Of a stretch of DNA of 64,000 nucleotides, positions 517 through 61,457 are shown piece by piece. This DNA comes from Macrostomum lignano. Lineage: Eukaryota. A model generated the notes under the pieces. It worked only from the letters and a program-made list of their open reading frames with translations. It did not search any database and had not been told where the DNA came from. A program made the translations under genes and the position numbers. The stretch is from assembly GCA_002269645.1 (NCBI GenBank), contig NIVC01001634.1, positions 124,001-188,000 on the forward strand. The letters are read 5' to 3'. The first letter of the stretch is position 1. Every line of letters starts with the position of its first letter.

Positions 517-870
517 AAATGGCGCCAAATATAGAGATGTCGGATGGTGCCAATTATGAGTCAGAAGGCGCAAATATATAGAGATGTCAGATGACTCAGA
601 TGGCGCCAAATAAAAAGGTGTCAGAAGGCGCCAAATAAAGGTGTCAAATAATGCCAATTAAAAAAGGTGTCAGATGACACCAAATAAAGAGGCGTTAAAT
701 GGTGCAAAATAAAAAGGTGTCGAATGGCGCCAAAAGGAGGTTTCAGATGGCGCAAAATGAAGGTATCAGATGGCGCCCAAAAATGGGTGTCAGTGTCAAA
801 TGGCGCCAAATAAAGAGGTGTCAGATGGCTCCAAATAAAAAGGTGTCAGATGGCGCCAAAATTGTCAGCA
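517..870. repeat. Degenerate ~25-bp minisatellite (AAAAAGGTGTCAGATGGCGCCAAAT) in the LIM GC-AG intron
   Basis: Repeated AGGTGTCAGATGGCGCCAAA motifs are visible directly. Confidence 0.8.
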
Positions 871-907
871 AAAGCGCTAAACCATATATACCAATAATCA
901 GTCTTGC

Positions 908-1145
908 CTGGCATAGTCGTGAGCACAATACAGTCGATTATCGCGCACAAAGCAGCCCTCAGTCAACTGGGAATTGCAGATGCAGCAGGTGGCGCACTGT
1001 TCGTGCCAGGCCAGAGATCTGATGCGCAATAAATATTTGTCAGTAATCCCTGTTTGACAGCCAAAGCAGGTTTCAAGAATTTCTGCCGCTGTTGAAGCAG
1101 TCTGCTGCTGCTGCTGCTGGTGTTCAGTCTCGTGGCTTATTGGAT
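908..1145 (-). CDS. LIM gene exon 2, first LIM domain
   Basis: Acceptor TTGATGCAG at 1146. Reads DPISHETEHQQQQQQ...CFGCQTGITDKYLLRIRSLAWHEQCATCCICNSQLTEGCFVRDNRLYCAHDYAR. Ends AG|GCAAGA (GC donor), in phase with exon 3. Confidence 0.9.
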
Positions 1146-1899
1146 CTGCATCAATGATAAAAATAATGGTAGACACCATTGAGATAAAAAACATTGCCAA
1201 ATTTAACAATCATACTTTATATAGCTAGTTGAATAGAATCAGAATATTGAAAAAACGCCTTCATTTAAAAGGTTAAAAAGCATCAATCATGATCAATCAC
1301 TAGATCTTGATCTAGTGATTGATTTTTGAAATTTTGACTTTTTTCTTGATTGAATCTTGATTAAAAAAAGTACCAAGAATCTGATATATATAAAACAGTA
1401 AAATAAAGAAAGAGCCTTAGGTTGAATACCAATCTTTTGAATATAGCATAGATAACCTAAAAAATCAACAAAAAATCAACTCATTATAGTGTCACCCATA
1501 TTAAGGGATTTAGGATTTAGCCATATTTGAAAAAATAATGCACCCAAAAATTTCTATGCTTTTTACAAATTAAATGTTATGATTTTTACCAAAAGTGCAC
1601 AAAGTATACATTTATTATAATATATAAAATTAGTTTTTTTTAGAAAACTGCTTTTTTAGTTCTTAGCTGTCTAATCTGAATAAATATCTCGAAATCTTGA
1701 TCAAATCTCTTATTGTATCATATGTTTATCATATGTTTATCATATACATGTATCATATATATTGTATTGTTAAAATCAATCAATGACCCTATCATTGAAC
1801 AAATAAGGTATAAATTTTGCCTTCAGATATAACTAACTAGATCATAGTTAAAAGTACTATATAGTATAAAAAAATAGTTAATATACTAGTCTTTATTTT

Positions 1900-2151
1900 G
1901 GCAATGGCTACGGATCCGGCAGTGCCATTATAATATAGATGGAACATTATATTTTTCTTTCTTCAGGTGGCCGATATTGAGATTTTATTCTAGATTAAAA
2001 TTTAAGACAATATGATAAGATTCGGGACGAGATGCTTCTAATATTCAGACTTAAGATATGTTCTTAGCAGTCTTTATATGCTTCTATACAGCACTGCCGG
2101 ATCCCTAGCTGTTAGAAAATGGGTTCCAGTGCCGGAACTCTAGCCATTACC
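1900..2151. mobile_element. 252-bp MITE with Merlin-like termini
   Basis: Imperfect TIRs GGCAATGGCTACGGATCCGGCA / TGCCGGAACTCTAGCCATTACC. Exact 9-bp direct repeat CTTTATTTT at 1891-1899 and 2152-2160. An extra inverted subterminal copy sits at ~2091-2110. Confidence 0.8.
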
Positions 2152-2565
2152 CTTTATTTTATTTACCATGAAAATTGATTTATTGAGTAAAAGAGAAAAT
2201 AATAATATTTTATATTAGTGCTTTGCTTGTTTATCTGAAAAGTGTCTAAAAGAATTATCTGAATTGAAAAGAAGTGTCTTTTGATACATATCCATATCTA
2301 CCTAACTACTATATAGCATATTTAGATAGTAGTTGTTGCACAAATAATTGTTGTCCCTATATTTTTCATAAAATTTAAAGAGTAGCCCTAGCAAGAAGTG
2401 TTCTATAGTTGATAATCAATAAAAAATTATTGGTAATGCCAACTAAAAAATCAAACTTACAACTTTACACATGTGACCCTAAGTATTAGGCTATGATACC
2501 AGAAAAAACTTGTTAGCACTTGCTATTGCTAATATTGCTATTTGAATTGGTAGATATCAATTTCT

Positions 2566-3882
2566 GGCAATTTTCCTTTTCTGTTCGTTAAATTATTTTT
2601 TCAATGGAAACGTATTGGGAACATTGTGAAACACTCAAAAATGATGTAACTTTTCAGCCTGATCATCGTATCTTGAACAACATGGCTGGACGCCCTGCTG
2701 CACCAACGTTTATTGTGCCCCCTCATACATACGCAACCTCCAAAATTTGGTAAGCCATGCGACTTAGTTTTAACAAAATGCAACATAGTTTTTTGCCAAA
2801 ATTCCGACTTACATGTTAAAAAAACTCTAGCATAAGTAGTGTAAAGAAAAATTAACGCTACTTTGGGTAAACGGCAGGAGTAACTATGACTGTCTTATTA
2901 AGTCAAAATGCCTCGTCAGCTACTTAGTACTACTACTTGGGTATTTTTTAGGTGGGCATTTTTGCGACTTCCTTGTTTGGCTGCCAAATCAGTCGGCCAG
3001 ATCGGCCGACTCGGCCGACTGTTGCGCATGTATGTGCCCCCTGCTCAAGTGCGACCAGCAATGGGGTTGACAAAAATCAATTTTACCATGCGTAACCTAA
3101 TCTGGTAGTAGGCAACTGATGCAAAGCAAAGTGAGTGCCAACGCCAGAGCAACATTGGCCACAAGGCAATTGTCGATTGGCAGAACTTCATTCGTGATAT
3201 CTGCGCCCAATTCCTTATGGACCATCCCATTGAGCTTGGTGGCCCCGGCCGCGAAGTGGAGATAGACAAATCATACTTTTTCCACTGCAAGTTCCACCAA
3301 GGAGCTCACCATGATGGTCAGTGGGTGCTTGGCATGATAGAGCATGGGGCCAGGAAGTGTGTACTTGTGCCAGTTGCACAATGCAATGCTGCCACCCTCT
3401 TGCCACTCATCCAACACCACGTCCTTCCTGGAACTTGCGTCATAACAGACGGATGGCAAGCTTATGCCCAGCTTCAGGCTGCAGGTGTGAACCACCAAGT
3501 CGTGAACCACTAGCTAGCATTTGTTAATCCTCAGGACCCAATGGTGCACACAAACCTCATTGAGGGGACGTGGGCGCACTGCAAGGCCAAATTTCGTGCC
3601 ATGCATGGTACTAGTAAGGCTCTGTTTGAGTCCTACCTAGAAGAATTCATATGGCGCAAAATGTATCCCACCAACACCTTTGGCAACATGCTCTACTGGA
3701 TTGCCCACTACTACGTTGTGTAAATACCACTGCAGAGACCAGAGTGCTGAGTGCTGAGTGAACACTAATCAACATTACACTTGTTCTGTTCTGTTCTGTT
3801 ACATCATTTTTGAGTGTTTCACAATGTTCCCAATACATTTCCATTGAAAAAATAATTTAACGAACAGAAAAGGAAAATTGCC
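2566..3882 (+). mobile_element. Merlin-superfamily (IS1595/ISXO2-like) DNA transposon, decayed, in LIM intron 1
   Basis: 85-bp TIRs (2566-2650 and 3798-3882, one mismatch) starting GGCAAT. 8-bp flanks CAATTTCT / CAATTTCC. Internal ISXO2-type transposase remnant. Confidence 0.92.
3160..3723 (+). pseudogene. ISXO2/Merlin DDE transposase pseudogene
   Basis: Reads VDWQNFIRDIC...GGPGREVEIDKS...GQWVLGMIEHG...TLLPLIQHHVLPGTCVITDGWQAY...VNH*LAFVNP..VHTNLIEGTW..YLEEFIWR. In-frame TAG at 3511-3513 and further stops upstream. Confidence 0.9.
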
Positions 3883-4114
3883 CAATTTCCCAATCAGGTT
3901 TTCGGCAAATCAACTTTTCGCAAAAAGGTAATCAGCATATCAATTTCTGGCAGAAAGGTTTTTGGAAAATCATCTAGTAGGCCTATTCACTATTCCTGGC
4001 ATGAGTCTGTCTGTCTGCAGACTTTAGTTAGTGTCTCAACCTACTTGGAAAAAATATGTCCTTACAACTAGCCAAATGCCAAAAAAGCAATTTTAAATAA
4101 GAAAAACAACTTAC

Positions 4115-4154
4115 CGCTTTTCAATGGGCTATGACTTTGAGATTCATCAAACAT
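4115..4154 (-). CDS. LIM gene probable exon 1 (MFDESQSHSPLKS)
   Basis: ATG at 4154, then 13 codons plus 1 nt, followed by a perfect donor GCG|GTAAGT. Phase 1 matches the exon 2 acceptor (G|AT = Asp). Confidence 0.6.
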
Positions 4155-5149
4155 TATAAATATAGAAATTTGGTAGGCTAAGCAACAGCAAGTCTGACTA
4201 CTAAACTATTGTCAGAATAAAATCTATAGTTAAACTTGAATAAAAAATCTGAAGAAAGTGCTTTTGTTTTAGTCTTTATTTAAAATTTTGTAAAAAAATG
4301 GACGGGAAAATCAGCTTTAAAATGATAGTTCGAAATTCGATCTTTCAAGTTTCAATGAATCTCAAAGATTGTGGTTGTGGCGTCTAAACTTCTAGTCTTG
4401 TATGTATAAATGTACTAAATAAATAATACACAAAAATATGTTTGCGTATAATCATTCATCAAGGATACTGAATTTTACTGGTCGCAGCTTGAAGTCTTCA
4501 TCATGCAATGGCAATGCTATGCTATGCGTCTTGACTCATTGGGCATTAAAGGGACAGGTTTTTAACATTAACTTTCTTAGAAATAACTATGAAAACTATT
4601 TTAATTCGAAGCTTTACTAGTGTTATGTGTTGTTTCATTTTTTACAAAAGTTTTCCTAATATATAAAAGTTTTAAAGCTTTCATTTTAGAAAGCTTTTAT
4701 TTTGTGTTAGTTATAGTTATAAAAAAAACTAACTGTGTTAAAGCGTTTTAAATTTTTAAATTTTAGATAAAAGTAACACATTTTTCGTAACATATCGGTT
4801 TTTATTATTATTTATATTTACAACTTTTTTCGGATATTCAACCAAATTATCGATCAAATTAACGATAGTCACTTAGTTATTGTATGAAAAAATGTCCAAT
4901 CGTTGTCAAAAATAATTGCCAAGTTGTTTTAGTTGTCGAATTCTGGAGATAAAAAATGTAGGTGATGCACATAGGACCCCTTGGCTTTCTTGGATGTTTC
5001 GGCATGTGTGAGGCTTCATGGGCCCTTCTGGAGCACATAGGGTTCGTGAAAAATATCTAACACTAGCTATCAAAATAATGAATGAATTAGTAGACGTTTA
5101 TCAGTATTCGACCTAAAGATAAATGCAAAAAACTAATGCAAAAAAGCTA

Positions 5150-5257
5150 TGTCAGAGGTGGGATTTGAACCCACGCATCCTTTCGGATACCAGAACGCTC
5201 AGGCAGCTAAGGTTGCACCCTTGAGTCTGGCGCCTTAGACCACTCGGCCACCCTGAC
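5150..5257 (-). tRNA. trnL-CAA: tRNA-Leu(CAA) with a 24-nt intron
   Basis: GTCAGGGTGGCCGAGTGGTCTAAGGCGCCAGACTCAAG[GGTGCAACCTTAGCTGCCTGAGCG]TTCTGGTATCCGAAAGGATGCGTGGGTTCAAATCCCACCTCTGACA. A and B boxes intact, long variable arm, A73, T6 terminator downstream, TATA-like TTATATT about 30 nt upstream. Confidence 0.95.
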
Positions 5258-5589
5258 TTGCTTACTATGGGCTGCCGTGCTGCAATATAAAGGCATGTTC
5301 TAAAAATAACCTGAACAGGCAAGAGCTTGCCTTGCGCATTGCTTCTTGCTAATACGCGTTGCCTTCGAATACATTGTGTGGATGTATTTTGTTTTTAATT
5401 TTTTGAAAAAGGAACAGAACAGATCTAAACTGTGAAAATTTCATAACTGAGTCGAAAACAACAGACTTATTCATTCGAATGCATAGTATGTACATGGTCA
5501 TGGATGTAAATTTTTTATAGCTGTGACAATTACTGTTATATCACTTGTACCTAACAGTCAGCAGAAATGAAGAAGACATTCGCTGCTTG

Positions 5590-6185
5590 TCCAGAAGAGA
5601 GGAGAGGAGAGGAGGAGAGAGAAAGAGAGGAGAAGAAGAGAGGAAGAGAGGAGAAGAGAGAGAGGAAGAGAGGTCGAGAGGAGAGGAGGAAAGAGGAAGA
5701 GAGGAGAGGCGAGGGGGGAGAGGAAGAGAGAAGAGGAGAGAAGAAGAGATGAGAGGGGGAGAGGAAGAGAGGAGAGGCGAGGAGGAGAGCTGAGGAAGAG
5801 AGGAGAAGAGATGAGAGGGGGAGAGGAAGAGAGGAGAGGCGAGGAGGAGAGCTGAGGAAGAGAGGAGAAGAAATGAGAGGGGGAGAGGAAGAGAGAAGAG
5901 GCGAGGAGGAGAGCTGAGGAAGAGAGGAGAAGAGATGAGAGGGGGAGAGGAAGAGAGGAGAGGCGAGGAGGAGAGCTGAGGAAGAGAGGAGAAGAGATGA
6001 GAGGGGGAGAGGAAGAGAGAAGAGGCGAGGAGGAGAGCTGAGGAAGAGAGGAGAAGAGAGGAGACTGGAGAGAGGAAGAGAGGAGAGGAGAGGAGAGAGG
6101 AGGAGAGGAGAGGAGGAGAGACGAAGAGAGGAGGAGAGAGGAAGAGAGGAAAGAGGAGATTAGAGAGAAGAGAACTGAGAAGAGA
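5590..6185. repeat. Purine-rich (GA) repeat with a ~62-bp unit
   Basis: GAGCTGAGG recurs at 5787, 5849, 5911 and 5973. Confidence 0.85.
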
Positions 6186-6659: not shown

Positions 6660-7190
6660 ATCTATAGTGTCCCCAAATATCAATCACCTCCTCTGGCAGT
6701 GCTCGTATAGCTTCTCTAATCTCAGCTTTTCCGGATTTACTAAACTTCTCTCGGTCGGCCTATAGAATCTCCAGCTCCCAGCCAGTAGCTTTCTGCTCTT
6801 GCCATCCAGGTGGAGCCAGCTGGTCTCATTCTGGCCATTTTGTAGATGGAGATCCGATCCGTCAAGATGCGATGGACTAGCTTAAAATAAATCTGATCCA
6901 AGCAGTCCGCTAGCTCCCTGACAGACTGCCGCGGGTTGTCCTTAAGCAGGTCGCTGATGACATCAATGTTCTCTGGCATTTGTCCATGGTTGAACATGGC
7001 CGACCAGATCTGGCGTCATCTTCCGATTCGACCCCATATATGGATCAGTATCGTGCTGGAACCACCTGTAAATTGTCCTGACAGTTGGGCAGTTGTCTGC
7101 TGCAGACTTTCCAAGCTTAAAGCGAACGAAAGCCAAGCCCCAGGATGTGCGGCTTGTCGTGAATTTCATTTTAACAAACTGCACTAAACA
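6660..7190 (-). mobile_element. Degenerate, internally deleted Tc1/mariner transposase remnant
   Basis: Frameshifted HTH-region motifs: FVRFKLGKSAAD..PTVRTIYRWF and PENIDVISDLLKDNPRQSVRELADCL..LVHRIL. No DDD domain or TIRs found. Confidence 0.6.
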
Positions 7191-7839
7191 TGATAAGCAT
7201 GAAGCAGTCGTGTCGTACACATCAATCAGTACTTTTAGACTTTTAGACGCGTACAATCGCTTTGTAGCGATTGTAGACTCTTGCTTTTCTGAAGCTCTGC
7301 TGCAAATCCAAAGTCTGTGCACTTTTTACCTCATCACCAGGCCAGCAATTTGCATGCTTCGTAGACGCAATTAAGTCGAATGACTTAAAAACTAATTGTG
7401 TTTAAATGTTTTCGTTATTTAAATTTCGTGCACATTTAAGACAGTATTTATACATGCTTCAAAAAATATCGGATTCTGTTAATTCATATCTGTCACTTTC
7501 TTCCCACATTTACTAAATTCAACGGCCAAATTAGCCATATACTCGCCTGTTTATCGACTGAAAGTTGTCAAATAAATGGTTTGATCTTTAGTGTCTCGAC
7601 AAATATGTGAATGAATTGTTGTACAGTGGATGCTTCCGCAGAGGCATCTAATTGTAGATGTTTCGGCTAAAGCCTAAGAGATTGTGAGGCTCATGGGGAT
7701 TTCTTCTGGGGGTACATGGGATTCGTTTAAAATATCTAACAATACCTAGAAACTTAATGACTCGTTACTTTTAACTCGTACATATAAAAGTTGATCCTAT
7801 TTGGCGTAATTGATACAACAAACAAATACAAAAACGCTA

Positions 7840-8990: not shown

Positions 8991-9378
8991 ATGACATCAT
9001 CCTCGCGATTAGTTGAAACTGTCCAATTAAACTTTGAAGATTTCTCCGAATCGTTTCTTACCTGTGGCACCTGTCTAACCCTGTTCGACAGTGGCGAGCA
9101 TCAGCCAAAACTGCTTCCATGCTCGCATACACTTTGCCGAGCCTGCCTACAAAGGATTGTACCTAATCCAGCATCTTCCTCAGCCTCATCGTCAGCAGCA
9201 GCAGCAGCAGCGGCTGCATCCACGCTCGGCACATTTCGCTGTCCGATATGTCGGGAAGGCATCGCCGTGCCTATCGGTGGTGCGGCAGCTTTTCCTCCAT
9301 CGTTTGTTGTCAACCAATTATTGGATTTGATGGTGTCCCAGCGCAAAGATCTGGTGCCGAAATGTTCCATTCATACTG
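8991..9378 (+). CDS. TRIM-NHL (TRIM2/3-like; RING, B-box, coiled coil, filamin, NHL) exon 1/7, RING finger
   Basis: MTSSSRLVETVQLNFEDFSESFLTCGTCL...PKLLPCSHTLCRACL...FRCPICRE...FPPSFVVNQLLDLM..QRKDLVPKCSIHT. Ends TG|GCAAGC (GC donor). Model join(8991-9378,10617-10768,11766-12035,21591-22133,22586-22765,23169-23615,24330-24485) = 2136 nt, 711 aa. Confidence 0.92.
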
Positions 9379-9501
9379 GCAAGCGAAACTAATCGATGTT
9401 TTGTACTCTTTTAATGTACTTTTAAAGTTGCTAGTGTACTTTTACGACCTGAATTAGCCGCCTTTTATTGAGGAGGCTTTAAAATGCGCTTAGAATAAGC
9501 T

Positions 9502-27560: not shown

Positions 27561-28242
27561 TCACAGGTGTGGACTCCTGGCCAGGTGGATGAAGAACTCC
27601 AGCCGGTCACGTGACTCCACCCCGCAGCGGCCGCATCTGAAAGGGTTGCGGCCTCTGCTGTGGAAGGCCATATGCAGGTGGTACATCAGGCTGTCCCTGA
27701 ACAGCATGCCGCAGTGCCGACACTCGCCAGCCTCGACGTCTGGAGGCGTCGACGAGGTTGAGCAGCCGGACGCTGATGAAGAACAGGATGCTGGTGCCAC
27801 CTGCTGCTGTTGAGTAGAAGCAGACTGCAGCTGCTCGAACTGCTCAATCAGACGCTTCTTCTTGATGTGAGACGGAGAGGACTGAGTGGCCGGCAGCTTG
27901 GCTGACAGGTCCAACGGGTGCGTCGCGCTGGCCTCCTCGGTCGGCAGCTGTGGCATCGGCGCCGGGCTGAATGCTGCGACTGCGGCGCTCTGATCGGCGC
28001 CGAAGGGAAAACTTAATCCTCCACTGAAAGGGAGGCCCGGCTGCTGATGAGGCGGAATCAGTGGCGGATGCTGAGGCTGAGGGACTAGCAGAGGTGGTTT
28101 AGGTGCACTGGCGACTTGGTGCGGTTGCCAAGGGGCTGGCAGAAGATGCTGTTGCTGTGGCTGCTGAAGAAACATGACCTGATCCTGCTGTTGACTCAGC
28201 GCGTCAGAGTCTAGCTTAGTTGCTGGGTACACCGGGTGACAC
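27561..28242 (-). CDS. hb: hunchback exon 4/4, C-terminal zinc-finger pair
   Basis: TTGCAG| then ...PLDLS..KKKR..ECRHCGMLFRDSLMYHLHMAFHSRGRNPFRCGRCGVESRDRLEFFIHLARSPHL*. Hunchback-type terminal fingers. Model join(33575-33499,33360-32798,30045-29400,28242-27561) = 1968 nt. Confidence 0.92.
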
Positions 28243-28295
28243 CTGCAAGTTGTAGTGATGGGGTATTGTATTCTAATAAGAATGGGGAGACAGGA

Positions 28296-29360
28296 TGACA
28301 GGACTGAGAGAGACAGGACTGAGAGAGACAGGACTGAGAGAGACAGGACTGAGAGAGACATGACTGAGAGAGACATGACTGAGAGAGACAGGACTGAGAG
28401 AGACAGGACTGGGAGAGACAGGACTGGGAGAGACAGGACTGGGAGAGACAGGACTAAGAGAGACAGGACTGGGAGAGACAGGACTGGGAGAGACAGGACT
28501 GGGAGAGACAGGACTGGGAGAGACAGGACTAAGAGAGACAGGACTGGGAGAGACAGGACTGGGAGAGACAGGACTGGGAGAGACAGGACTAAGAGAGACA
28601 GGACTGGGAGAGACAGGACTGGGAGAGACAGGACTGAGAGAGACAGGACTGAGAGAGACAGGACTGAGAGAGACAGGACTGGGAGAGACAGGACTGGGAG
28701 AGACAGGACTGAGAGAGACAGGACTGAGAGAGACAGGACTGGGAGAGACAGGACTGGGAGAGACAGGACTGGGAGAGACAGGACTGAGAGAGACAGGACT
28801 GGGAGAGACAGGACTGGGAGAGACAGGACTGAGAGAGACAGGACTGAGAGAGACAGAACTGGGAGAGACAGGACTGGGAGAGACAGGACTGGGAGAGACA
28901 GGACTGGGAGAGACAGGACTGGGAGAGACAGGACTGAGAGAGACAGGACTGAGAGAGACAGGACTGAGAGAGACAGGACTGGGAGAGACAGGACTGAGAG
29001 AGACAGGACTGAGAGAGACAGGACTGAGAGAGACAGGACTGAGAGAGACAGGACTGGGAGAGACAGGACTGGGAGAGACAGGACTGAGAGAGACAGGACT
29101 GGGAGAGACAGGACTGGGAGAGACAGGACTGGGAGAGACAGGACTGGGAGAGACAGGACTGGGAGAGACCGGACTGGGAGAGACCGGACTGGGAGAGACA
29201 GGACTGGGAGAGACAGGACTGAGAGAGACAGGACTGAGAGAGACAGGACTGGGAGAGACAGGACTGGGAGAGACAGGACTGAGAGAGACAGGACTAAGAG
29301 AGACAGGACTGGGAGAGACAGGATTGAGAGAGACAGGACTGGGAGAGAGAGGACTGGAGA
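28296..29360. repeat. 15-bp minisatellite GAGAGACAGGACT(G/A)(A/G) (hb intron 3)
   Basis: Direct. Source of the RDRTG and SPVSP ORFs. Confidence 0.95.
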
Positions 29361-29399
29361 GAAAGACAGGAAGGGTTGAGTCCCTCAGCAATGCCTCAC

Positions 29400-30045
29400 C
29401 TTTCAGTGGGTGCCGCAGCCGCCTCCAGCTCAGGCTGCACCTGCAGCTTCAGCCTGGCCTTCTGCTGCCGTCTCCGGGACTTGGCTGCCGAGGCCGCCTG
29501 TTCCTCAGGCATGCTGCCATCCGGGTTGAGGGTTGCCGCTGGCTGGTGGCCGTACTTGCGCAGGTGCTGCCTCAGCGAGTGGCAGTACTTGCTAGCATAT
29601 CCGCAGTCCCGGCACCTGTGCTGATAGACATTGGTGTGGGACTTGAGATGCGAGTTGAGCATGCTGCGGTTCACGCACTGGTAGTTGCATTTGCCGCATT
29701 TGTAGGGCTTGGAGCCGAAATGATTGCGGATGTGGTACTCAAGGTGGTGCTTGTACTCGGTGACGAAGGGGCACTTGGGGCACTGCAGCATCCTGTCGGC
29801 CTTGATGTGCGACCTGGCGTGCTCCCAGAAGGCGGTCTTGTCCTCGGCGGTGAAGTCGCACTGCTTGCAGCGAAGCACCTTCGGGCAGGAGGCGCGGCCA
29901 GTGTAAGTCGGCGGCGGCACCACGCTGTGAAAGTCGCGCACGTGACGACGAAGTCGGCCGCTTGTGCGACATTTGTAGTCGCATTGGGGGCACTGCTGAT
30001 CATAGTGGGTGCCCATGTGCTGGCGGAACGTCTCGCGACTCACGC
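29400..30045 (-). CDS. hb: hunchback exon 3/4, central DNA-binding fingers
   Basis: ...[22 protein letters not shown]...[95 protein letters not shown]. This is the diagnostic Hb finger array. Donor AG|GTGAGG. Confidence 0.97.
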
Positions 30046-30077
30046 CTGAAGGTTTGTGGGTTCGTTTGGAGGGCGTC

Positions 30078-31530
30078 TGACTGTCGTGTCCAACAGGTAA
30101 CTGTCGTGTCTAACAGGTGACTGTCGTGTCTAACAGGTGACTGTCGTGTTTAACAGGTGACTGTCGTGTCTAACAGGTGACTGTCGTGTCGAACAGGTGG
30201 CTGTCGTGTTTAACAGGTGACTGTCGTGTCTAACAGGTGACTGTCGTGTCTAACAGGTGACTGTCGTGTTTAACAGGTGACTGTCGTGTCTAACAGGTGA
30301 CTGTCGTGTCGAACAGGTGGCTGTCGTGTCTAACAGGTGACTGTCGAGTCGAACAGGTGGCTGTCGTGTTTAACAGGTGACTGTCGTGTCTAACAGGTGA
30401 CTGTCGTGTCGAACAGGTGACTGTCGTGTTTAACAGGTGACTGTCGTGTTTAACAGGTGACTGTCGTGTTTAACAGGTGACTGTCGTGTCTAACAGGTGA
30501 CTGTCGTGTCGAACAGGTGGCTGTCGTGTCTAACAGGTGACTGTCGAGTCGAACAGGTGGCTGTCGTGTTTAACAGGTGACTGTCGTGTCTAACAGGTGA
30601 CTGTCGTGTCTAACAGGTGACTGTCGTGTTTAACAGGTGACTGTCGTGTCTAACAGGTGACTGTCGTGTCTAACAGGTGACTGTCGTGTTTAACAGGTGA
30701 CTGTCGTGTCTAACAGGTGACTGTCGTGTTTAACAGGTGACTGTCGTGTTTAACAGGTGACTGTCGTGTTTAACAGGTGACTGTCGTGTCTAACAGGTGA
30801 CTGTCGTGTCTAACAGGTGACTGTCGTGTCTAACAGGTGACTGTCGTGTCTAACAGGTGACTGTCGTGTTTAACAGGTGACTGTCGTGTCTAACAGGTGA
30901 CTGTCGTGTCTAACAGGTGACTGTCGTGTCGAACAGGTGGCTGTCGTGTCTAACAGGTTACTGTCGTGTCTAACAGATGACCGTCCTGTCTAACAGGTGA
31001 CTGTCGTGTTTAAAAGGTGACTGTCGTGTCTAACAGGTGACTTTCGTGTTTAACAGGTGACTGTCGTGTCTAACAGGTGACTTTCGTGTCTAACAGGTGA
31101 CTGTCGTGTCTAACAGGTGACTGTCGTGTTTAACAGGTGACTGTCGTGTTTAACAGGTGACTGTCGTGTCTAACAGAGACCGTCCTGTCTAACAGGTGAC
31201 TGTCGTGTCTAACAGGTGACTGTCGTGTTTAACAGGTGACTGTCGTGTCTAACAGGTGACCGTCCTGTCTAACAGGTGACTGTCGTGTCTAACAGGTGAC
31301 AGGTGTGTGACACTGTCCTGTCTAACAGGTGTGTGACACTGTCTAACATGTGTGACACTGTCTTGTCTAACAGGTGTGTGACCCTGTCTAACAGGTGTGT
31401 GACACTGTCTAACATGTGTGACACTGTCTAACATGTGTGACACTGTCTTGTCTAACAGGTGTGTGACACTGTCTAACAGGTGTGTGACACTGTCTAACAT
31501 GTGTGACACTGTCTTGTCTAACAGGTGTGT
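30078..31530. repeat. 20-bp minisatellite CTGTCGTGTCTAACAGGTGA (hb intron 2)
   Basis: Direct. Grades into a TGTGACACTGTCTAACA variant. Confidence 0.95.
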
Positions 31531-32034
31531 GTCAAGCTGTTTTGCATCCGAAGTAAGGTCCCTTGCTAGTCCATGAACTTAATTTAAGATTTGGATAATT
31601 TTCTCGCAAATAAGTTTTCCAACCAGCTGAAAACGGATACAAAAGACTGTGACGCAACCAAGGCAAGACTGATGCGGAGAAATCAGCAACAAGGAGCTGC
31701 GTGACCAACTGACCACTTGATAGACCGGACTGACAGAACCGCTAATTCAATGGGACTCCGCAGCCCTCCCAGCACACTTCACAGACCGCCAGAGCCCTTG
31801 TTGGTCGTGGCAACAGAACATTTTTCGAATCCCGGAAAGTTTTACTCGAAAAGGTTGGTTAAAAAACTGAAATATCCCCGAGAAATTCAGCCGGCAAATT
31901 GTGGATTTCAGCATTTAGTCACGTTTTGACTTTATTTTTGCCCAGTAAGTTTTAAAGAACAGAAGAATCACGTTTTGAAATTCAGGATTCATAATTTAGT
32001 GAACAGCTGTTCAAAAGAATTTCTGGGGATATTG

Positions 32035-32730
32035 CAGACCCACTAGGGATGTCACAGACTCACTGAGGGATCCAACAGACTCACTGGGGATGTCACAGAC
32101 TCACTGGGAATGTCACAGACTCACTGGGAATGTCACAGACTCACTGAGAATGTCACAGACTCACTGGGGATGTCACAGACTCACTGGGAATGTCACAGAC
32201 TCACTGGGAATGTCACAGACTCACTGGGAATGTCACAGACTCACTGGGAATGTCACAGACTCACTGGGAATGTCACAGACTCACTGGGAATGTCACAGAC
32301 TCACTGGGAATGTCACAGACTCACTGGGGATGTCACAGACTCACTGGGAATGTCACAGACTCACTAAGAATGTCACAGATTCACTGAGGATGTCACAGAT
32401 TCACTGAGGATGTCACAGATTCACTGAGGATGTCACAGACTCACTAGGGATGTCACAGATTCACTGAGGATGTCACAGATTCACTGAGGATGTCACAGAC
32501 TCACTAGGGATGTCACAGATTCACTGAGGATGTCACAGATTCACTGAGGATGTCACAGATTCACTGAGGATGTCACAGATTCACTAGGGATGTCACAGAT
32601 TTACTGAGGATGTCACAGATTCACTGAGGATGTCACAGACTCACTAGGGATGTCACAGATTCACTGAGGATGTCACAGATTCACTGAGGATGTCACAGAT
32701 TCACTGAGGATGTCACAGACTCACTGGGGA
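32035..32730. repeat. 20-bp minisatellite TGTCACAGACTCACTGGGAA (hb intron 2)
   Basis: Direct, in two variant blocks. Confidence 0.95.
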
Positions 32731-32797
32731 TCACGGATGACGATCACAGACTCTCTGGGATCACGGATGATGATGACAATATCCCCCAAGGTCTCAC

Positions 32798-33360
32798 CGG
32801 TGTAGTTGCACAGGTGGCAGGCGAAGATCCCGTGAGCATCACCGTCTGCAGTCGCCGCGGCCGCCTCCGCTTTGCCCACCGCGGCCTCCTGATCCTCGTC
32901 CACCTCATCATCGAGGTCGTCAAGATCCTCAACAACCTCGTCTTCTTCCAGCTCGTCAGCAAGTTGATCCTCCTCGTCAAATTCAAAGTAGGCCACTGAT
33001 GTGGAAGTCGCCGCTGCATCCGTCGGCTGCTTCGTCTGCTTCGTTGTCTCCGACGACCCGGTTGCCATGGAAACGCTTGTTGTCGCTGTCGGAGTTTTCG
33101 GCGGCGACGAGCCGGACTCGATCGAGAAGGCGGCCAGCTCGACGTCAGCGCTGAACGTCCGCTCTTCGCACGAGCGACCTCGTTCTGGTTCGGGGAAATC
33201 CTCTCGAGTCTTGGGATCATTTGGTCGCAGCCGGTGCTCCGCATTTTCGTCCGGGTCATCTTGGCACGATTCCGAATCTGGCGAAGCGGACTGCGCTGAT
33301 TGGCTGGCTGTGGCCTGCGATGCAGATGACGTGGCAAACGCTGATTGGTTGGTGCAGCGC
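32798..33360 (-). CDS. hb: hunchback exon 2/4, acidic region and start of the N-terminal finger
   Basis: TTTTCGTAG|...DEEDQLADELEEDE...GIFACHLCNYT G|GTGAGA. Splices to exon 3 to give [21 protein letters not shown]. Confidence 0.88.
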
Positions 33361-33498
33361 CTACGAAAATATATTGATTGGTAGAAAAAACGATTGGATA
33401 CGCGTATCGAATAATGGTTAAATTTAGTAGCGAGCATTTCTTAGTTTGTCTCAATAGAAAAGTAACAATAAAAATCGACTTGATCATTAAAAGCTTAC

Positions 33499-40749: not shown

Positions 40750-43700
40750 ATACCTTCTCCCTCACTATCTACCTTGGTGTCTCGCCTCTCTCCCTCACTA
40801 TCTACCTTGGTGTCTCGCCTCTCTCCCTCACTATCTACTTTGGTGTCTCGCCTCTCTCCCTCACTATCTACGTTGGTGTTTCACCTCTCTCCCTCACTAT
40901 CTACTTTGGTGTCTCATCTGTCTCTCCCTCACTATCTACCTTGGTGTCTCGCCTCTCTCCCTCACTATCTACCTTGGTGTCTCGCCTCTCTCCCTCACTA
41001 TCTACCTTGGTGTCTCGCCTCTCTCCCTCACTATCTACTTTGGTGTCTCGCCTCTCTCCCTCACTATCTACTTTGGTGTCTCGCCTCTCTCCCTCACTAT
41101 CTACCTTGGTGTCTCGCCTCTCTCCCTCACTATCTACTTTGGTGTCTCGCCTCTCTCCCTCACTATCTACGTTGGTGTCTCACCTCTCTCACTCACTATC
41201 TACCTTGGTTTTTCACCTCTCTCCCTCACTATCTACGTTGGTGCCTCACCTCTCCCTCACTATCTACCTTGGTGTCTCACCTCTCTCCCTCACTATCTAC
41301 CTTGGTGTCTCACCTCTCTCCCTCACTATCTACCTTGGTGTCTCACCTCTCCCTCACTATCTACTTTGGTGTCTCATCTGTCTCTCTCTCACTATCTACC
41401 TTGGTGTCTCACCTCTCTCCCTCACTATCTACTTTGGTGTCTCACCTCTCTCCCTCACTATCTACTTTGGTGTCTCATCTGTCTCTCCCTCACTATCTAC
41501 CTTGGTGTCTCGCCTCTCTCCCTCACTATCTACCTTGGTGTCTCGCCTCTCTCCCTCACTATCTACCTTGGTGTCTCATCTGTCTCTCACTCACTATCTA
41601 CGTTGGTGTTTCACCTCTCTCCCTCACTATCTACTTTGGTGTCTCACCTCTCTCACTCACTATCTACGTTGGTGTTTCACCTCTCTCCCTCACTATCTAC
41701 GTTGGTGTCTCACCTCTCTCACTCACTATCTACGTTGGTGTTTCACCTCTCTCCCTCACTATCTACCTTGGTGTTTCACCTCTCTCCCTCACTATCTACT
41801 TTGGTGCCTCATCTGTCTCTCCCTCACTATCTACCTTGGTGTCTCGCCTCTCTCCCTCACTATCTACCTTGGTGTCTCATCTGTCTCTCCCTCACTATCT
41901 ACCTTGGTGTCTCGCCTCTCTCCCTCACTATCTACCTTGGTGTCTCGCCTCTCTCCCTCACTATCTACCTTGGTGTCTCATCTGTCTCTCCCTCACTATC
42001 TACCTTGGTGTCTCGCCTTTCTCCCTCACTATCTACTTTGGTGTCTCGCCTCTCTCCCTCACTATCTACTTTGGTGTCTCACCTCTCTCACTCACTATCT
42101 ACGTTGGTGTTTCACCTCTCTCCCTCACTATCTACGTTGGTGTCTCACCTCTCTCACTCACTATCTACGTTGGTGTTTCACCTCTCTCCCTCACTATCTA
42201 CGTTGGTGTCTCACCTCTCTCACTCACTATCTACGTTGGTGTTTCACCTCTCTCCCTCACTATCTACCTTGGTGTCTCGCCTCTCTCCCTCACTATCTAC
42301 TTTGGTGTCTCGCCTCTCTCCCTCACTATCTACCTTGGTGTCTCGCCTCTCTCCCTCACTATCTACTTTGGTGTCTCGCCTCTCTCCCTCACTATCTACG
42401 TTGGTGTCTCACCTCTCTCACTCACTATCTACCTTGGTTTTTCACCTCTCTCCCTCACTATCTACGTTGGTGTCTCACCTCTCCCTCACTATCTACCTTG
42501 GTGTCTCACCTCTCTCCCTCACTATCTACCTTGGTGTCTCACCTCTCTCCCTCACTATCTACCTTGGTGTCTCACCTCTCCCTCACTATCTACTTTGGTG
42601 TCTCATCTGTCTCTCTCTCACTATCTACCTTGGTGTCTCACCTCTCTCCCTCACTATCTACTTTGGTGTCTCACCTCTCTCCCTCACTATCTACTTTGGT
42701 GTCTCATCTGTCTCTCCCTCACTATCTACCTTGGTGTCTCGCCTCTCTCCCTCACTATCTACCTTGGTGTCTCACCTCTCTCCCTCACTATCTACCTTGG
42801 TGTCTCACCTCTCTCCCTCACTATCTACCTTGGTGTCTCACCTCTCCCTCACTATCTACTTTGGTGTCTCATCTGTCTCTCTCTCACTATCTACCTTGGT
42901 GTCTCACCTCTCTCCCTCACTATCTACTTTGGTGTCTCACCTCTCTCCCTCACTATCTACTTTGGTGTCTCATCTGTCTCTCCCTCACTATCTACCTTGG
43001 TGTCTCGCCTCTCTCCCTCACTATCTACCTTGGTGTCTCACCTCTCTCCCTCACTATCTACCTTGGTGTCTCGCCTCTCTCCCTCACTATCTACCTTGGT
43101 GTCTCGCCTCTCTTCCTCACTATCTACCTTGGTGTCTCGCCTCTCTCCCTCACTATCTACTTTGGTGTCTCACTTCTCTCCCTCACTATCTACCTTGGTG
43201 TCTCGCCTCTCTCCCTCACTATCTACTTTGGTGTCTCACCTCTCTCCCTCACTATCTACCTTGGTGTCTCACCTCTCCCTCACTATCTACTTTGGTGTCT
43301 CATCTGTCTCTCTCTCACTATCTACCTTGGTGTCTCACCTCTCTCCCTCACTATCTACTTTGGTGTCTCATCTGTCTCTCTCTCACTATCTACCTTGGTG
43401 TCTCGCCTCTCTCCCTCACTATCTACTTTGGTGTCTCACCTCTCTCCCTCACTATCTACTTTGGTGTCTCATCTGTCTCTCCCTCACTATCTACCTTGGT
43501 GTCTCGCCTCTCTCCCTCACTATCTACCTTGGTGTCTCACCTCTCTCCCTCACTATCTACCTTGGTGTCTCGCCTCTCTCCCTCACTATCTACCTTGGTG
43601 TCTCGCCTCTCTTCCTCACTATCTACCTTGGTGTCTCGCCTCTCTCCCTCACTATCTACTTTGGTGTCTCACTTCTCTCCCTCACTATCTACCTTGGTGT

Positions 43701-46700
43701 CTCGCCTCTCTCCCTCACTATCTACTTTGGTGTCTCATCTGTCTCTCCCTCACTATCTACCTTGGTGTCTCGCCTCTCTCCCTCACTATCTACTTTGGTG
43801 TCTCATCTGTCTCTCCCTCACTATCTACCTTGGTGTCTCGCCTCTCTCCCTCACTATCTACCTTGGTGTCTCACCTCTCTCACTCACTATCTACGTTGGT
43901 GTTTCACCTCTCTCCCTCACTATCTACTTTGGTGTCTCACCTCTCTCACTCACTATCTACGTTGGTGTTTCACCTCTCTCCCTCACTATCTACGTTGGTG
44001 TCTCACCTCTCTCACTCACTATCTACGTTGGTGTTTCACCTCTCTCCCTCACTATCTACCTTGGTGTTTCACCTCTCTCCCTCACTATCTACTTTGGTGT
44101 CTCATCTGTCTCTCCCTCACTATCTACCTTGGTGTCTCGCCTCTCTCCCTCACTATCTACCTTGGTGTCTCATCTGTCTCTCCCTCACTATCTACCTTGG
44201 TGTCTCGCCTCTCTCCCTCACTATCTACCTTGGTGTCTCGCCTCTCTCCCTCACTATCTACCTTGGTGTCTCATCTGTCTCTCCCTCACTATCTACCTTG
44301 GTGTCTCGCCTCTCTCCCTCACTATCTACTTTGGTGTCTCGCCTCTCTCCCTCACTATCTACTTTGGTGTCTCACCTCTCTCACTCACTATCTACGTTGG
44401 TGTTTCACCTCTCTCCCTCACTATCTACGTTGGTGTCTCACCTCTCTCACTCACTATCTACGTTGGTGTTTCACCTCTCTCCCTCACTATCTACTTTGGT
44501 GTCTCACCTCTCTCACTCACTATCTACTTTGGTGTCTCACCTCTCTCACTCACTATCTACTTTGGTGTCTCACCTCTCTCACTCACTATCTACGTTGGTG
44601 TTTCACCTCTCTCCCTCACTATCTACCTTGGTGTCTCGCCTCTCTCCCTCACTATCTACTTTGGTGTCTCACCTCTCTCACTCACTATCTACGTTGGTGT
44701 TTCACCTCTCTCCCTCACTATCTACCTTGGTGTCTCGCCTCTCTCCCTCACTATCTACGTTGGTGTTTCACCTCTCTCACTCACTATCTACTTTGGTGTC
44801 TCGCCTCTCTCCCTCACTATCTACCTTGGTGTTTCACCTCTCTCCCTCACTATCTACCTTGGTGTCTCGCCTCTCTCACTCACTATCTACGTTGGTGTTT
44901 CACCTCTCTCACTCACTATCTACTTTGGTGTCTCGCCTCTCTCCCTCACTATCTACGTTGGTGTTTCACCTCTCTCACTCACTATCTACTTTGGTGTCTC
45001 ACCTCTCTCACTCACTATCTACGTTGGTGTTTCACCTCTCTCCCTCACTATCTACCTTGGTGTCTCGCCTCTCTCCTCACTATCTACGTTGGTGTTCACC
45101 TCTCTCCTCACTATCTACTTGGTGTCTCGCCTCTCTCCCTCACTATCTACCTTGGTGTCTCGCCTCTCTCCCTCACTATCTACTTTGGTGTCTCGCCTCT
45201 CTCCCTCACTATCTACGTTGGTGTCTCACCTCTCTCACTCACTATCTACCTTGGTTTTTCACCTCTCTCCCTCACTATCTACGTTGGTGTCTCACCTCTC
45301 CCTCACTATCTACCTTGGTGTCTCACCTCTCTCCCTCACTATCTACCTTGGTGTCTCACCTCTCTCCCTCACTATCTACCTTGGTGTCTCACCTCTCCCT
45401 CACTATCTACTTGGTGTCTCATCTGTCTCTCTCACTATCTACCTTGGTGTCTCACCTCTCTCCCTCACTATCTACTTTGGTGTCTCACCTCTCTCCCTCA
45501 CTATCTACTTTGGTGTCTCATCTGTCTCTCCCTCACTATCTACCTTGGTGTCTCGCCTCTCTCCCTCACTATCTACTTGGTGTCTCACCTCTCTCCCTCA
45601 CTATCTACCTTGGTGTCTCACCTCTCTCCCTCACTATCTACCTTGGTGTCTCACCTCTCCCTCACTATCTACTTTGGTGTCTCATCTGTCTCTCCTCACT
45701 ATCTACCTTGGTGTCTCACCTCTCTCCCTCACTATCTACTTTGGTGTCTCACCTCTCTCCCTCACTATCTACTTGGTGTCTCATCTCTCTCCCTCACTAT
45801 CTACCTTGGTGTCTCGCCTCTCTCCCTCACTATCTACCTTGGTGTCTCACCTCTCTCCCTCACTATCTACCTTGGTGTCTCGCCTCTCTCCCTCACTATC
45901 TACCTTGGTGTCTCGCCTCTCTCCCTCACTATCTACTTGGTGTCTCGCCTCTCTCCCTCACTATCTACCTTGGTGTCTCGCCTCTCTCCCTCACTATCTA
46001 CTTGGTGTCTCGCTCTCTCCCTCACTATCTACCTTGGTGTCTCGCCTCTCTCCCTCACTATCTACTTGGTGTCTCATCTGTCTCTCCCTCACTATCTACC
46101 TTGGTGTCTCGCTCTCTCCCTCACTATCTACCTTGGTGTCTCGCCTCTCTCCCTCACTATCTACCTTGGTGTCTCGCTCTCTCCCTCACTATCTACCTTG
46201 GTGTCTCGCCTCTCTCCCTCACTATCTACCTTGGTGTCTCGCCTCTCTCCCTCACTATCTACCTTGGTGTCTCGCCTCTCTCCCTCACTATCTACTTGGT
46301 GTCTCGCCTCTCTCCCTCACTATCTACTTTGGTGTCTCACCTCTCTCCTCACTATCTACTTGGTGTCTCACCTCTCTCCCTCACTATCTACTTGGTGTCT
46401 CACCTCTCTCCTCACTATCTACTTGGTGTTCACCTCTCTCCCTCACTATCTACTTGGTGTCTCACCTCTCTCCTCACTATCTACTTGGTGTCTCACCTCT
46501 CTCCCTCACTATCTACCTTGGTGTCTCACCTCTCTCCCTCACTATCTACTTGGTGTCTCACCTCTCTCCCTCACTATCTACCTTGGTGTCTCGCTCTCTC
46601 CCTCACTATCTACCTTGGTGTCTCATCTCTCTCCCTCACTATCTACCTTGGTGTCTCGCCTCTCTCCCTCACTATCTACCTTGGTGTCTCGCCTCTCTCC

Positions 46701-55700: not shown

Positions 55701-55745
55701 GGTGTTTCACCTCTCTCCCTTACTATCTACGTTGGTGTTTCACCC
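40750..55745. repeat. ~15-kb satellite with a 33-bp unit, CTCACTATCTACCTTGGTGTCTCGCCTCTCTCC (31-35-bp variants)
   Basis: Roughly 450 tandem units (length divided by 33). Explains the three ~5000-aa ORFs. Confidence 0.98.
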
Positions 55746-56184
55746 TTCTCCATCTTATCTTAACCATGAGAATCTTCAGCGCCTGATTGTCTCGTCTGAG
55801 CACTTCATCTGACTCTGCACGCTGTTCTCACACAGTCGAACTTCTTTTGAGCAGCTTCTGAATTCTCTCAAAGGCAAGCACTAGCTACTCCGCATCTCCT
55901 TTGTTTCAGCGAACAGAGAGACTGCTCAGTGGACCGGATTCAGCGGCTAATTAAAGACAACTCAAACCGCATCCAAAATCCCTGTGCAAGACTTGCGCAA
56001 TGGGCACTTGAAACTGCACAAAAATTCTAGATTAAAAATAGCTTCCCAGTATAACTGTCGCGGAATATGAACTCGTTTATTAAATCTTAAATCTGTCATA
56101 ACAATGATGAACACACTCGAGTTCTAAAGCGAAGGCAAGAAATGTGAAGTGTATGACTCACTGTCACTGATAAAACTGTAGACG

Positions 56185-61409: not shown

Positions 61410-61444
<35 letters not shown>

Positions 61445-61457
61445 TTAATACTACTAC

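What the first reader, a model, noticed from the sequence alone, without database searches (positions are those of the whole stretch)
2566..3882. CpG-deamination signature confined to the transposon, suggesting TE-targeted DNA methylation
Seen: the only TIR mismatch is CG (2611-2612) versus CA (3836-3837). The TSD mismatch is CC|GG versus CT|GG, a CpG formed at the junction (caveat: a similar CAATTTCTGGCA 16-mer occurs at 3937). I count about 12 CpG in 3217-3723 at roughly 50% GC, where about 30 would be expected, while hb and TRIM exons are CpG-rich. Established: ISXO2 motifs read IDES, RKxHRG, ERG and WxAY. Here they read IDKS (GAC AAA), CKFHQG (TGC, CAA), EHG (CAT) and WQAY (CAA), each one CpG transition from the consensus. 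Inference: the element was methylated in the germline while exons were not. That is the reverse of the usual invertebrate gene-body pattern, and notable if this is a flatworm, where 5mC is thought to be low or absent in many lineages.
Basis: partly seen in the sequence, partly recalled or inferred. Interest (0 to 1): 0.7.

Follow-up and report, generated by a model that had tools for sequence, protein, structure and literature searches.

The report
CpG-decayed Merlin transposon in Macrostomum
A broken "Merlin" jumping gene in the flatworm Macrostomum lignano has lost over half its expected CpG sites by the mutation type that methylated DNA produces, while neighbouring genes have not; this hints that the worm methylates transposons, but one copy cannot prove it.

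Summary
The element at 2566-3882 is a non-autonomous Merlin (IS1595/ISXO2-like) DNA transposon: 85-nt TIRs starting GG, an 8-bp TSD and a DDE_Tnp_IS1595 remnant with one stop and about 100 aa deleted. The host is Macrostomum lignano: the hunchback exon matches UniRef A0A1I8JMR1 block by block.

The core observation holds. The transposase remnant has 16 CpG against 39 expected (o/e 0.41). Pooled exons give 0.90 and unique non-element DNA gives 0.84. Six of 12 private replacements at conserved columns are CpG transitions (null 3-9%). The single TIR mismatch is CG versus TG. CpG sites in the window's minisatellites are not hypermutable.

Several details fail:
- HQG and WQAY are shared with the nearest relatives, so they are not decay.
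- The TSD mismatch is probably a T>C change in the right copy.
- The element's 5' third is not depleted (0.84).
- The AT-rich left flank is depleted (0.47), so the signal is not strictly confined to the element.

The papers read here state that M. lignano retains DNMT1 and DNMT3 and has low 5mC. TE methylation is therefore plausible, not paradoxical. One copy cannot show TE targeting genome-wide. Verdict: partly supported, moderate interest.

The parts
2558..2565 (+). Left copy of the 8-bp target-site duplication, CAATTTCT
   Evidence: It matches the right copy at 7 of 8 positions. The T at 2565 is shared with the paralogous unit at 3941-3948.
2566..2650 (+). Left terminal inverted repeat, 85 nt, starting 5'-GG(CA); it carries 2 CpG (2586, 2611)
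   Evidence: 99% complementary to the right arm; arm alignment.
2686..2752 (+). Remnant of the transposase N-terminus (MAGRPAAPTFIVPP...), in a different frame from the catalytic remnant and followed by GTAAG
   Evidence: translation. It matches the N-termini of P0001 and P0006 in alignment A1.
2751..3040 (+). About 290 bp with no counterpart in the intronless homologs (an intron or an insertion). It contains the GC-rich near-palindrome 2990-3021 and is not CpG-depleted (o/e about 0.8-1.2).
   Evidence: (I3).
3112..3720 (+). DDE_Tnp_IS1595 transposase remnant, 203 codons, with one in-frame stop (TAG 3511-3513). The DDE triad is retained (D52, D113, E151). About 100 aa upstream of the domain are deleted. 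CpG is 16 observed against 39.3 expected.
   Evidence: (PF12762, E=7e-23).
3721..3797 (+). 3' untranslated internal segment with no CpG (3.3 expected)
3798..3882 (-). Right terminal inverted repeat, 85 nt, ending ...GCC. CA at 3836-3837 stands where the left arm has CG.
3883..3890 (+). Right copy of the 8-bp target-site duplication, CAATTTCC
3936..3975 (+). Paralogous copy of the pre-insertion target unit (ATATCAATTTCTGGCAGAAAGGTTTTTGG...). It explains the 16-mer shared with 2554-2569.
   Evidence: (D1).

Best explanation
Window 2566-3882 is an internally deleted, non-autonomous Merlin-superfamily DNA transposon in the Macrostomum lignano genome.

Shown: its transposase remnant has lost over half of the CpGs expected from its composition, through CpG>TpG and CpG>CpA transitions.

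Inferred: the most likely cause is spontaneous deamination of 5-methylcytosine in the germline while this element lineage was CpG-methylated. The host is reported to retain DNMT1 and DNMT3. Neighbouring exons, unique intergenic DNA and minisatellites were not detectably subject to the same process.

Inferred: because the 85-nt TIRs are still 99% identical, much of the decay probably built up in the non-autonomous lineage before its last transposition. That would mean the methylation followed the element, not this locus.

Not established: that methylation is aimed at transposons as a class, and that gene bodies are unmethylated genome-wide. One copy cannot show either.
For: Identity of the element:
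- PF12762 at E=7e-23; 85-nt TIRs starting GG and an 8-bp TSD; these fit the Merlin definition in PMC8101967.

Host:
- The hunchback zinc-finger exon 29396-30043(-) matches M. lignano UniRef A0A1I8JMR1 in blocks that are each fully or almost fully identical, 153 of 215 residues in all; the gaps probably reflect mis-modelled introns in that entry.

CpG depletion:
- Remnant 16 of 39.3, o/e 0.41, TG+CA o/e 1.62.
- Pooled unique non-element DNA: 1051 of 1245, o/e 0.84. Pooled exons: 451 of 499, o/e 0.90.
- Poisson P = 7e-4 and 2e-4.
- The remnant is the second-lowest of the 609-bp windows of unique sequence.
- Intact homolog CDSs from other hosts have o/e 0.56-0.99 over the same aligned region.

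Substitution spectrum:
- Six of 12 private replacements at columns at least 75% conserved are CpG transitions (E53K, R59C, R78H, R91C, R109C, T144M). The null expectation is 3-9%; P = 6e-7 to 2e-4.
- Six of 7 C/G transitions lie in CpG against 21% expected under a context-free GC>AT bias; P = 5e-4.
- Conserved Arg columns changed in 5 of 8 cases, other conserved columns in 12 of 90 (Fisher P = 0.004).
- The only TIR mismatch is CG versus TG.

Control:
- In the window's minisatellite arrays (8 of the 21 tested have CpG in their consensus), CpG sites show 5.1% transitions (20 of 390) against 4.6% at other C/G sites (534 of 11543). There is no CpG hypermutability there.

Literature:
- DNMT1 and DNMT3 are retained and 5mC is low in M. 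lignano (PMC11292947, PMC10658182, PMC9246332).
Against: - Only one copy was available. There is no second copy in the window, and no M. lignano relative in the protein collection; the best hit is 68% identical.
- 'Private' changes are judged against homologs no more than 68% identical, from other hosts. Some could be old, family-specific states.
- The element's 5' internal third (2651-3111) has o/e 0.84, so depletion is not uniform along the element.
- The left flank 861-2565 is also CpG-poor (o/e 0.47) without a TpG/CpA excess.
- The homolog P0006 has o/e 0.56 in an intact ORF, so low CpG can occur in this family without pseudogenisation.
- No 5mC measurement and no DNMT search of the genome was possible.
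Confidence: 0.6

Rival explanations
1. Inherited composition. The CpG-poor, R>C/H-rich sequence was acquired before the element entered, or long before it settled in, the present epigenetic context. One route is horizontal transfer of an already decayed element from a host with heavy methylation. On this reading the signature says nothing about present M. lignano methylation.
For: The TIRs are 99% identical, implying a recent insertion, while the ORF remnant carries many changes, so most decay predates this insertion. The family occurs in sequence from many sources, including a sea slug protein and unnamed Logan and ENA assemblies. One intact relative, P0006, is itself CpG-poor at o/e 0.56.
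Against: A deleted, stop-containing element cannot move itself. It needs a related autonomous element in the same genome, so a resident history is the simpler account. The TIR mismatch, which arose after insertion, is itself a CpG transition. The host is reported to have DNMT1 and DNMT3 (PMC11292947).
Confidence: 0.14
2. Regional effect, not TE-targeted. A CpG-poor domain upstream of the LIM-homeobox gene (about 860-3800) reflects local methylation or local mutational and compositional bias, and the element merely sits in it.
For: The left flank 861-2565 has o/e 0.47 (19 of 40.4), and the window 1161-1769 has 0.22, the lowest in the whole window.
Against: The flank has 27-31% GC and no TpG/CpA excess (1.07 against 1.6 in the remnant). 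The element's own 5' third (o/e 0.84) lies between the flank and the depleted remnant. The right flank is near background (0.74). The amino-acid-level decay is measured against the family, not against local composition.
Confidence: 0.1
3. No methylation involved. The pattern is chance plus lineage-specific amino-acid replacements and codon or dinucleotide preferences in a short, 0.6-kb sequence.
For: The sample is small, and the comparison set is distant (no more than 68% identity). There is a general GC>AT transition bias in this window's repeats: 4.6% at C/G against 2.4% at A/T.
Against: The enrichment survives a context-free GC>AT null (P = 5e-4), and the composition test gives P about 2e-4 to 7e-4. 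The independent TIR mismatch is also a CpG transition. Minisatellite CpGs do not share the effect.
Confidence: 0.1
4. A RIP-like or APOBEC-like editing process acted on the repeat.
For: None specific. It was considered only because both processes target repeats or foreign DNA with C>T changes.
Against: The RIP indices run the wrong way: TpA/ApT is 0.60 and (CpA+TpG)/(ApC+GpT) is 1.59 in the remnant. The changes are in CpG context, not the CpA>TpA or TC/CC contexts.
Confidence: 0.02

Closest known systems
Merlin superfamily of eukaryotic DNA transposons (related to bacterial IS1016/IS1595; Feschotte 2004, as summarised in PMC8101967)
   Same: A DDE_Tnp_IS1595 catalytic domain with the DDE triad; TIRs within the 24-462 bp range with terminal 5'-GG; an 8-bp TSD; the superfamily is known from flatworms.
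   Different: This copy is non-autonomous. About 100 aa upstream of the catalytic domain are deleted, there is one in-frame stop, and about 290 bp are present that the intronless relatives lack. The nearest relatives found are only 63-68% identical, and none comes from M. lignano.
CpG decay of methylated transposons in vertebrates, plants and some invertebrates (mosaic methylomes with TE methylation; PMC11292947)
   Same: CpG o/e about 0.4 with a TpG/CpA excess. Arg (CGN) codons have been converted to Cys, His or Gln. The TIR mismatch is at a CpG. Neighbouring unmethylated-type sequence keeps its CpG.
   Different: There is no direct methylation evidence here. Only one copy was available. Depletion is uneven along the element. 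The host is reported to have only low global 5mC.
Canonical invertebrate gene-body methylation (molluscs, annelids, insects; PMC11292947, PMC9246332)
   Same: The same DNMT1/DNMT3 toolkit is reported in the host.
   Different: In this window the exons of four genes, including the MT-A70 (METTL3-like) methyltransferase gene, have pooled CpG o/e 0.90. That is no sign of historical germline methylation. The CpG-decayed sequence is the transposon.

Membership tests
Merlin superfamily (DNA transposon) | DDE_Tnp_IS1595 (PF12762) transposase domain | tested here: met
   E=7.2e-23, 81.7 bits against a cutoff of 27, covering profile positions 5-151 of 153.
Merlin superfamily (DNA transposon) | Terminal inverted repeats of 24-462 bp with conserved terminal 5'-GG | tested here: met
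   85-nt arms, 84 of 85 matching, starting GGCAATTTTCC. Definition taken from PMC8101967.
Merlin superfamily (DNA transposon) | 8- or 9-bp target-site duplication | tested here: met
   CAATTTCT and CAATTTCC, 7 of 8 identical. The reconstructed empty site aligns with a neighbouring paralogous unit.
Merlin superfamily (DNA transposon) | Catalytic D, D, E residues present | tested here: met
   D52, D113 and E151 are invariant columns and are retained in the window copy.
Autonomous (self-mobilising) Merlin element | Uninterrupted full-length transposase ORF of about 310-350 aa | tested here: not met
   stop at 3511-3513; about 100 aa of the N-terminal half absent; the N-terminal remnant is in another frame.
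Germline-methylated (5mC-targeted) transposon | CpG depletion relative to composition and to neighbouring DNA, with a TpG/CpA excess | tested here: met
   o/e 0.41 against 0.84 (unique DNA) and 0.90 (exons); TG+CA o/e 1.62. This holds only for 3112-3797, not for 2651-3111.
Germline-methylated (5mC-targeted) transposon | Substitutions enriched for CpG transitions relative to other contexts | tested here: met
   6 of 12 private replacements (null 3-9%); 6 of 7 C/G transitions in CpG (null 21%). The comparison is with distant homologs, not with same-genome copies.
Germline-methylated (5mC-targeted) transposon | The same signature across many copies or families of TEs in the genome | not testable with these tools
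   There is no second copy in the window. No M. lignano copy is in the protein or contig collections.
Germline-methylated (5mC-targeted) transposon | Direct detection of 5mC on the element | not testable with these tools
   This needs WGBS, EM-seq or nanopore data. Only literature statements of low global 5mC are available (PMC11292947, PMC10658182).
Germline-methylated (5mC-targeted) transposon | Host encodes maintenance and de novo CpG methyltransferases (DNMT1, DNMT3) | not tested
   Not in the 64-kb window. Reported for M. lignano in PMC9246332 and PMC11292947, both citing Wasik et al. 2015, which is not held in the library.
RIP-type repeat mutation | High TpA/ApT and low (CpA+TpG)/(ApC+GpT) | tested here: not met
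   0.60 and 1.59 in the remnant.

The most novel reading that the evidence does not exclude
Macrostomum lignano, a flatworm that kept DNMT1 and DNMT3, uses its low-level 5mC mainly on transposons and not on gene bodies. That would be a TE-centred methylome in a phylum where most studied members have lost CpG methylation. This Merlin copy would be a fossil record of it.
Probability: 0.3. Interest if true: 0.6.

Novelty: new member of a known kind. Interest (0 to 1): 0.4.

Why it matters
[quoted passage not shown] M. lignano is the flatworm model reported to retain both DNMT1 and DNMT3.

A sequence-only signature that separates a transposon (CpG o/e 0.41) from four neighbouring genes (0.90) gives a concrete, cheaply testable prediction: 5mC sits on TEs and not on gene bodies. 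A bisulfite data set is cited for this species and assemblies exist, so the test could be run on those.

If true genome-wide, it would bear on how TE methylation and gene-body methylation were gained and lost in Spiralia. As it stands it is a single-locus hint, and CpG decay of methylated TEs is a well-known phenomenon.

Tried and rejected
- Looked for other copies of the element in the window: none (blastn and tblastn).
- Exact look-up of the 98-aa remnant ORF in public assemblies: not on record. No same-genome consensus could therefore be built.
- Word-indexed protein searches with the hunchback C-terminal exon and the TRIM filamin exon gave no hits. The host was identified only with the full HMMER search of the hunchback zinc-finger exon plus a cluster look-up.
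- I suspected from memory that 6740-7322(-) was a mariner-type HTH remnant that could serve as a second TE. Pfam gave nothing even at E up to 10, so the idea was dropped. Its CpG o/e is 0.72.
I inspected stop-to-stop ORFs instead and saw no other TE-like ORF among those examined (the output was cut).
- The TSD mismatch as junction CpG decay was rejected as evidence. The paralogous unit points to T as ancestral.
- HQG and WQAY as decay states were rejected.
- RIP-like or APOBEC-like editing was rejected.
- Wasik et al. 2015 could not be read. What it says about where 5mC lies is unknown to me.

Full report
**What is at the coordinates.** Window 2566-3882 (1317 bp) is bounded by 85-nt inverted repeats, 2566-2650 and 3798-3882, that match at 84 of 85 positions. 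The arms start GGCAATTTTCC and are flanked by CAATTTCT (2558-2565) and CAATTTCC (3883-3890). The frame from 3112 to 3720 encodes 203 codons with one stop (TAG 3511-3513). It matches Pfam PF12762, DDE_Tnp_IS1595 (the ISXO2-like transposase domain), at E=7e-23.

Nineteen homologs were aligned; the closest is 68% identical. They show that the three catalytic residues D52, D113 and E151 are retained. They also show that about 100 residues upstream of the domain are missing.
- An N-terminal remnant (MAGRPAAPTFIVPP, 2686-2752) lies in another frame and is followed by GTAAG.
- After it come about 290 bp that the intronless homologs lack.
- TIRs with terminal GG, an 8-bp TSD and this domain are the defining features of the Merlin superfamily as summarised in PMC8101967.

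The element is therefore a non-autonomous Merlin deletion derivative. There is no other copy in the window.

**Host.** About 58% of the window is micro- and minisatellite arrays. Between the arrays lie exons of four genes:
- a LIM-homeobox-type gene (2-310 and 901-1209, minus strand);
- a TRIM-NHL gene (RING 8991-9392, B-box 10550-10780, filamin 21591-22151, NHL 22553-23700);
- hunchback (27564-28250, 29399-30076 and 32781-33440, minus strand);
- an MT-A70 (METTL3-like) gene (60600-63270, minus strand).

A full HMMER search with the hunchback zinc-finger exon, followed by a cluster look-up, gave two Macrostomum lignano UniRef entries as the closest named proteins. BLASTP shows blocks that are fully or almost fully identical to A0A1I8JMR1 (153 of 215 residues), separated by gaps that probably reflect mis-modelled introns in that entry. 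The window is therefore from M. lignano or something almost indistinguishable from it.

**Checking the observation.** The CpG count is right: 12 in 3217-3723 against 33 expected. Over the whole remnant (3112-3720) it is 16 against 39.3, o/e 0.41, with TG+CA o/e 1.62. The comparisons are:

| Sequence | CpG observed / expected | o/e |
|---|---|---|
| Transposase remnant 3112-3720 | 16 / 39.3 | 0.41 |
| Pooled unique non-element DNA | 1051 / 1245 | 0.84 |
| Pooled exons | 451 / 499 | 0.90 |
| Element 5' internal part 2651-3111 | 18 / 21.4 | 0.84 |
| Left flank 861-2565 | 19 / 40.4 | 0.47 |
| Right flank 3883-5606 | 36 / 48.7 | 0.74 |

The Poisson probability of 16 or fewer CpG is 7e-4 against the unique-DNA background and 2e-4 against the exon background. 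The remnant is the second-lowest of the 609-bp windows of unique sequence. Six intact homolog coding sequences from other hosts have o/e 0.56-0.99 over the same aligned region. The family is therefore not intrinsically as CpG-poor as this copy, although one relative (P0006, 0.56) comes close.

**Substitution spectrum.** Among 98 columns conserved in at least 75% of homologs, the window copy differs at 17. Five of these are shared with one of the three nearest relatives and are probably family states: K55Y, M57F, R63Q, I110V and N119A. Of the remaining 12, six are single CpG transitions:
- E53K (cGAA>cAAA);
- R59C, R91C and R109C (CGC>TGC);
- R78H (CGT>CAT);
- T144M (ACG>ATG).

Most of the sequenced homologs carry CGN at these Arg positions.
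- The expected share of CpG transitions among nonsynonymous changes is 3-9%, for transition/transversion weights of 1 to 4. This gives P from 6e-7 to 2e-4.
- Against a null that allows a context-free GC>AT bias, 6 of 7 C/G transitions fall in CpG where 21% is expected (P=5e-4).
- Conserved Arg columns changed in 5 of 8 cases, against 12 of 90 for other conserved columns (Fisher P=0.004).
- The single TIR mismatch is CG (2611-2612) versus TG in the same orientation. It falls on one of only two CpGs in the 85-nt arm.

CpG-specific hypermutation in this element's lineage is therefore well supported.

1. HQG and WQAY are not decay states. The nearest relatives encode Q at both positions.
2. The TSD mismatch is not good evidence. 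With the element removed, the site (ATATCAATTTCT|CAATCAGGTTTTCGGCAAATCAACT) aligns with a paralogous unit starting at 3936 (ATATCAATTTCTGGCAGAAAGGTTTTTGGAAAATCATCT). That unit has T at the mismatched position.
3. 'Confined to the transposon' is only partly true. The element's 5' internal part has o/e 0.84. The AT-rich left flank has o/e 0.47, although without a TpG/CpA excess (1.07).

**A within-window control.** I asked whether CpG sites are hypermutable in the other repeated DNA of the window. Units of 21 minisatellite arrays were compared with their majority consensus; eight of the arrays have CpG in that consensus.
- CpG positions show 5.1% transitions (20 of 390).
- Other C/G positions show 4.6% (534 of 11543).
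- A/T positions show 2.4%.

There is a general GC>AT bias but no CpG-specific excess in the arrays. Array variants are not independent events, so this is a qualitative control. It does agree with the exon and intergenic o/e values: the CpG-specific decay is a property of the transposon sequence, not of the region's repeats in general.

**Mechanism.** The established route from CpG to TpG or CpA at elevated rate is deamination of 5-methylcytosine. RIP-type mutation is excluded by the indices: TpA/ApT is 0.60 and (CpA+TpG)/(ApC+GpT) is 1.59. The sequence contexts do not fit APOBEC-type editing.

The papers available state that M. lignano retains DNMT1 and DNMT3 and has low-level 5mC in bisulfite data (PMC11292947, PMC10658182, PMC9246332, all citing Wasik et al. 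2015). [quoted passage not shown] I could not read Wasik et al. itself.

My best explanation (confidence about 0.6) is that this Merlin lineage was CpG-methylated in the M. lignano germline and decayed accordingly. Because the TIRs are still 99% identical while the ORF remnant is heavily altered, much of the decay probably predates the last, trans-mobilised insertion. That favours methylation following the element, not the locus. This last step is inference.

**Rivals.** The rivals considered are:
- decay before arrival, for example horizontal transfer of an already decayed element (about 0.14);
- a regional effect that includes the left flank (about 0.10);
- chance plus lineage-specific replacements (about 0.10);
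- editing processes (about 0.02).

None can be excluded without more copies or methylation data.

**Novelty and score.** CpG decay of methylated transposons is a familiar phenomenon, and TE methylation occurs in some invertebrates (PMC11292947). M. lignano is not a flatworm lacking the machinery.

What remains of interest is a specific, testable prediction for a model flatworm whose methylation landscape is reportedly undescribed: 5mC on TEs, with little historical methylation of gene bodies. Four genes here, including the MT-A70 (METTL3-like) gene, have o/e 0.90. That rests on one 1.3-kb copy and four genes. I rate interest at 0.4. The stronger reading, a TE-centred methylome genome-wide, has probability about 0.3 and would deserve about 0.6 if true.

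Noticed in passing
window 40752-55751: A 15-kb array of about 457 copies of a 33-bp unit (ACCTCTCTCCCTCACTATCTACCTTGGTGTCTC). It has extreme strand asymmetry (GC skew about -0.56, AT skew about -0.54) and is open in three + frames for about 5000 codons.
   Followed up: partly
whole window: About 58% of the 64 kb is tandem repeat. There are more than 30 distinct micro- and minisatellite arrays (periods 3-62 bp), many sitting between the exons of hunchback and the TRIM-NHL gene. The arrays show a GC>AT transition bias (4.6% against 2.4%) but no CpG-specific excess.
   Followed up: partly
window 2554-2569 and 3937-3952: An exact 16-mer, ATATCAATTTCTGGCA, occurs at the left junction (including the first 4 nt of the TIR) and 55 bp past the right TSD. 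Most of it is explained by a ~40-bp paralogous unit. The extra GG match with the TIR start may be coincidence or a target preference for end-like sequence.
   Followed up: partly
window 2751-3040, especially 2990-3021: About 290 bp inside the element has no counterpart in the intronless homologs. It begins with GTAAG just after the N-terminal remnant (a possible intron). It contains a GC-rich near-palindrome, CAGTCGGCCAGATCGG/CCGACTCGGCCGACTG, that holds 5 of the element's 37 CpGs.
   Followed up: no
window 60600-63270 (minus strand): Exons of an MT-A70 family (METTL3-like, DPPW motif) RNA m6A methyltransferase gene (Pfam PF05063, E=2e-30 and 9e-21). Their CpG o/e of 0.76-1.05 shows no gene-body-methylation signature.
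   Followed up: partly
window 27564-33440 (minus strand): The hunchback gene has N-terminal, middle four-finger and C-terminal two-finger exons separated by minisatellite-filled introns. The UniRef model A0A1I8JMR1 appears to skip parts of the zinc-finger exon, which suggests a mis-annotated gene model.
   Followed up: partly
window 861-2565: An AT-rich (27-31% GC) stretch upstream of the LIM1 exon with CpG o/e 0.47 (0.22 in 1161-1769) but no TpG/CpA excess. Its origin is undetermined: an old repeat, a promoter or intron, or a compositional effect.
   Followed up: no
loci L001, L003-L006 (Logan contigs): Each related intact Merlin element sits on a contig of 1.09-1.35 kb. Where I read the contig ends (L001, L003) they are inverted repeats of each other, as if assembly graphs break at the termini of multi-copy elements. 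Those terminal sequences are unrelated to the window's TIR.
   Followed up: no
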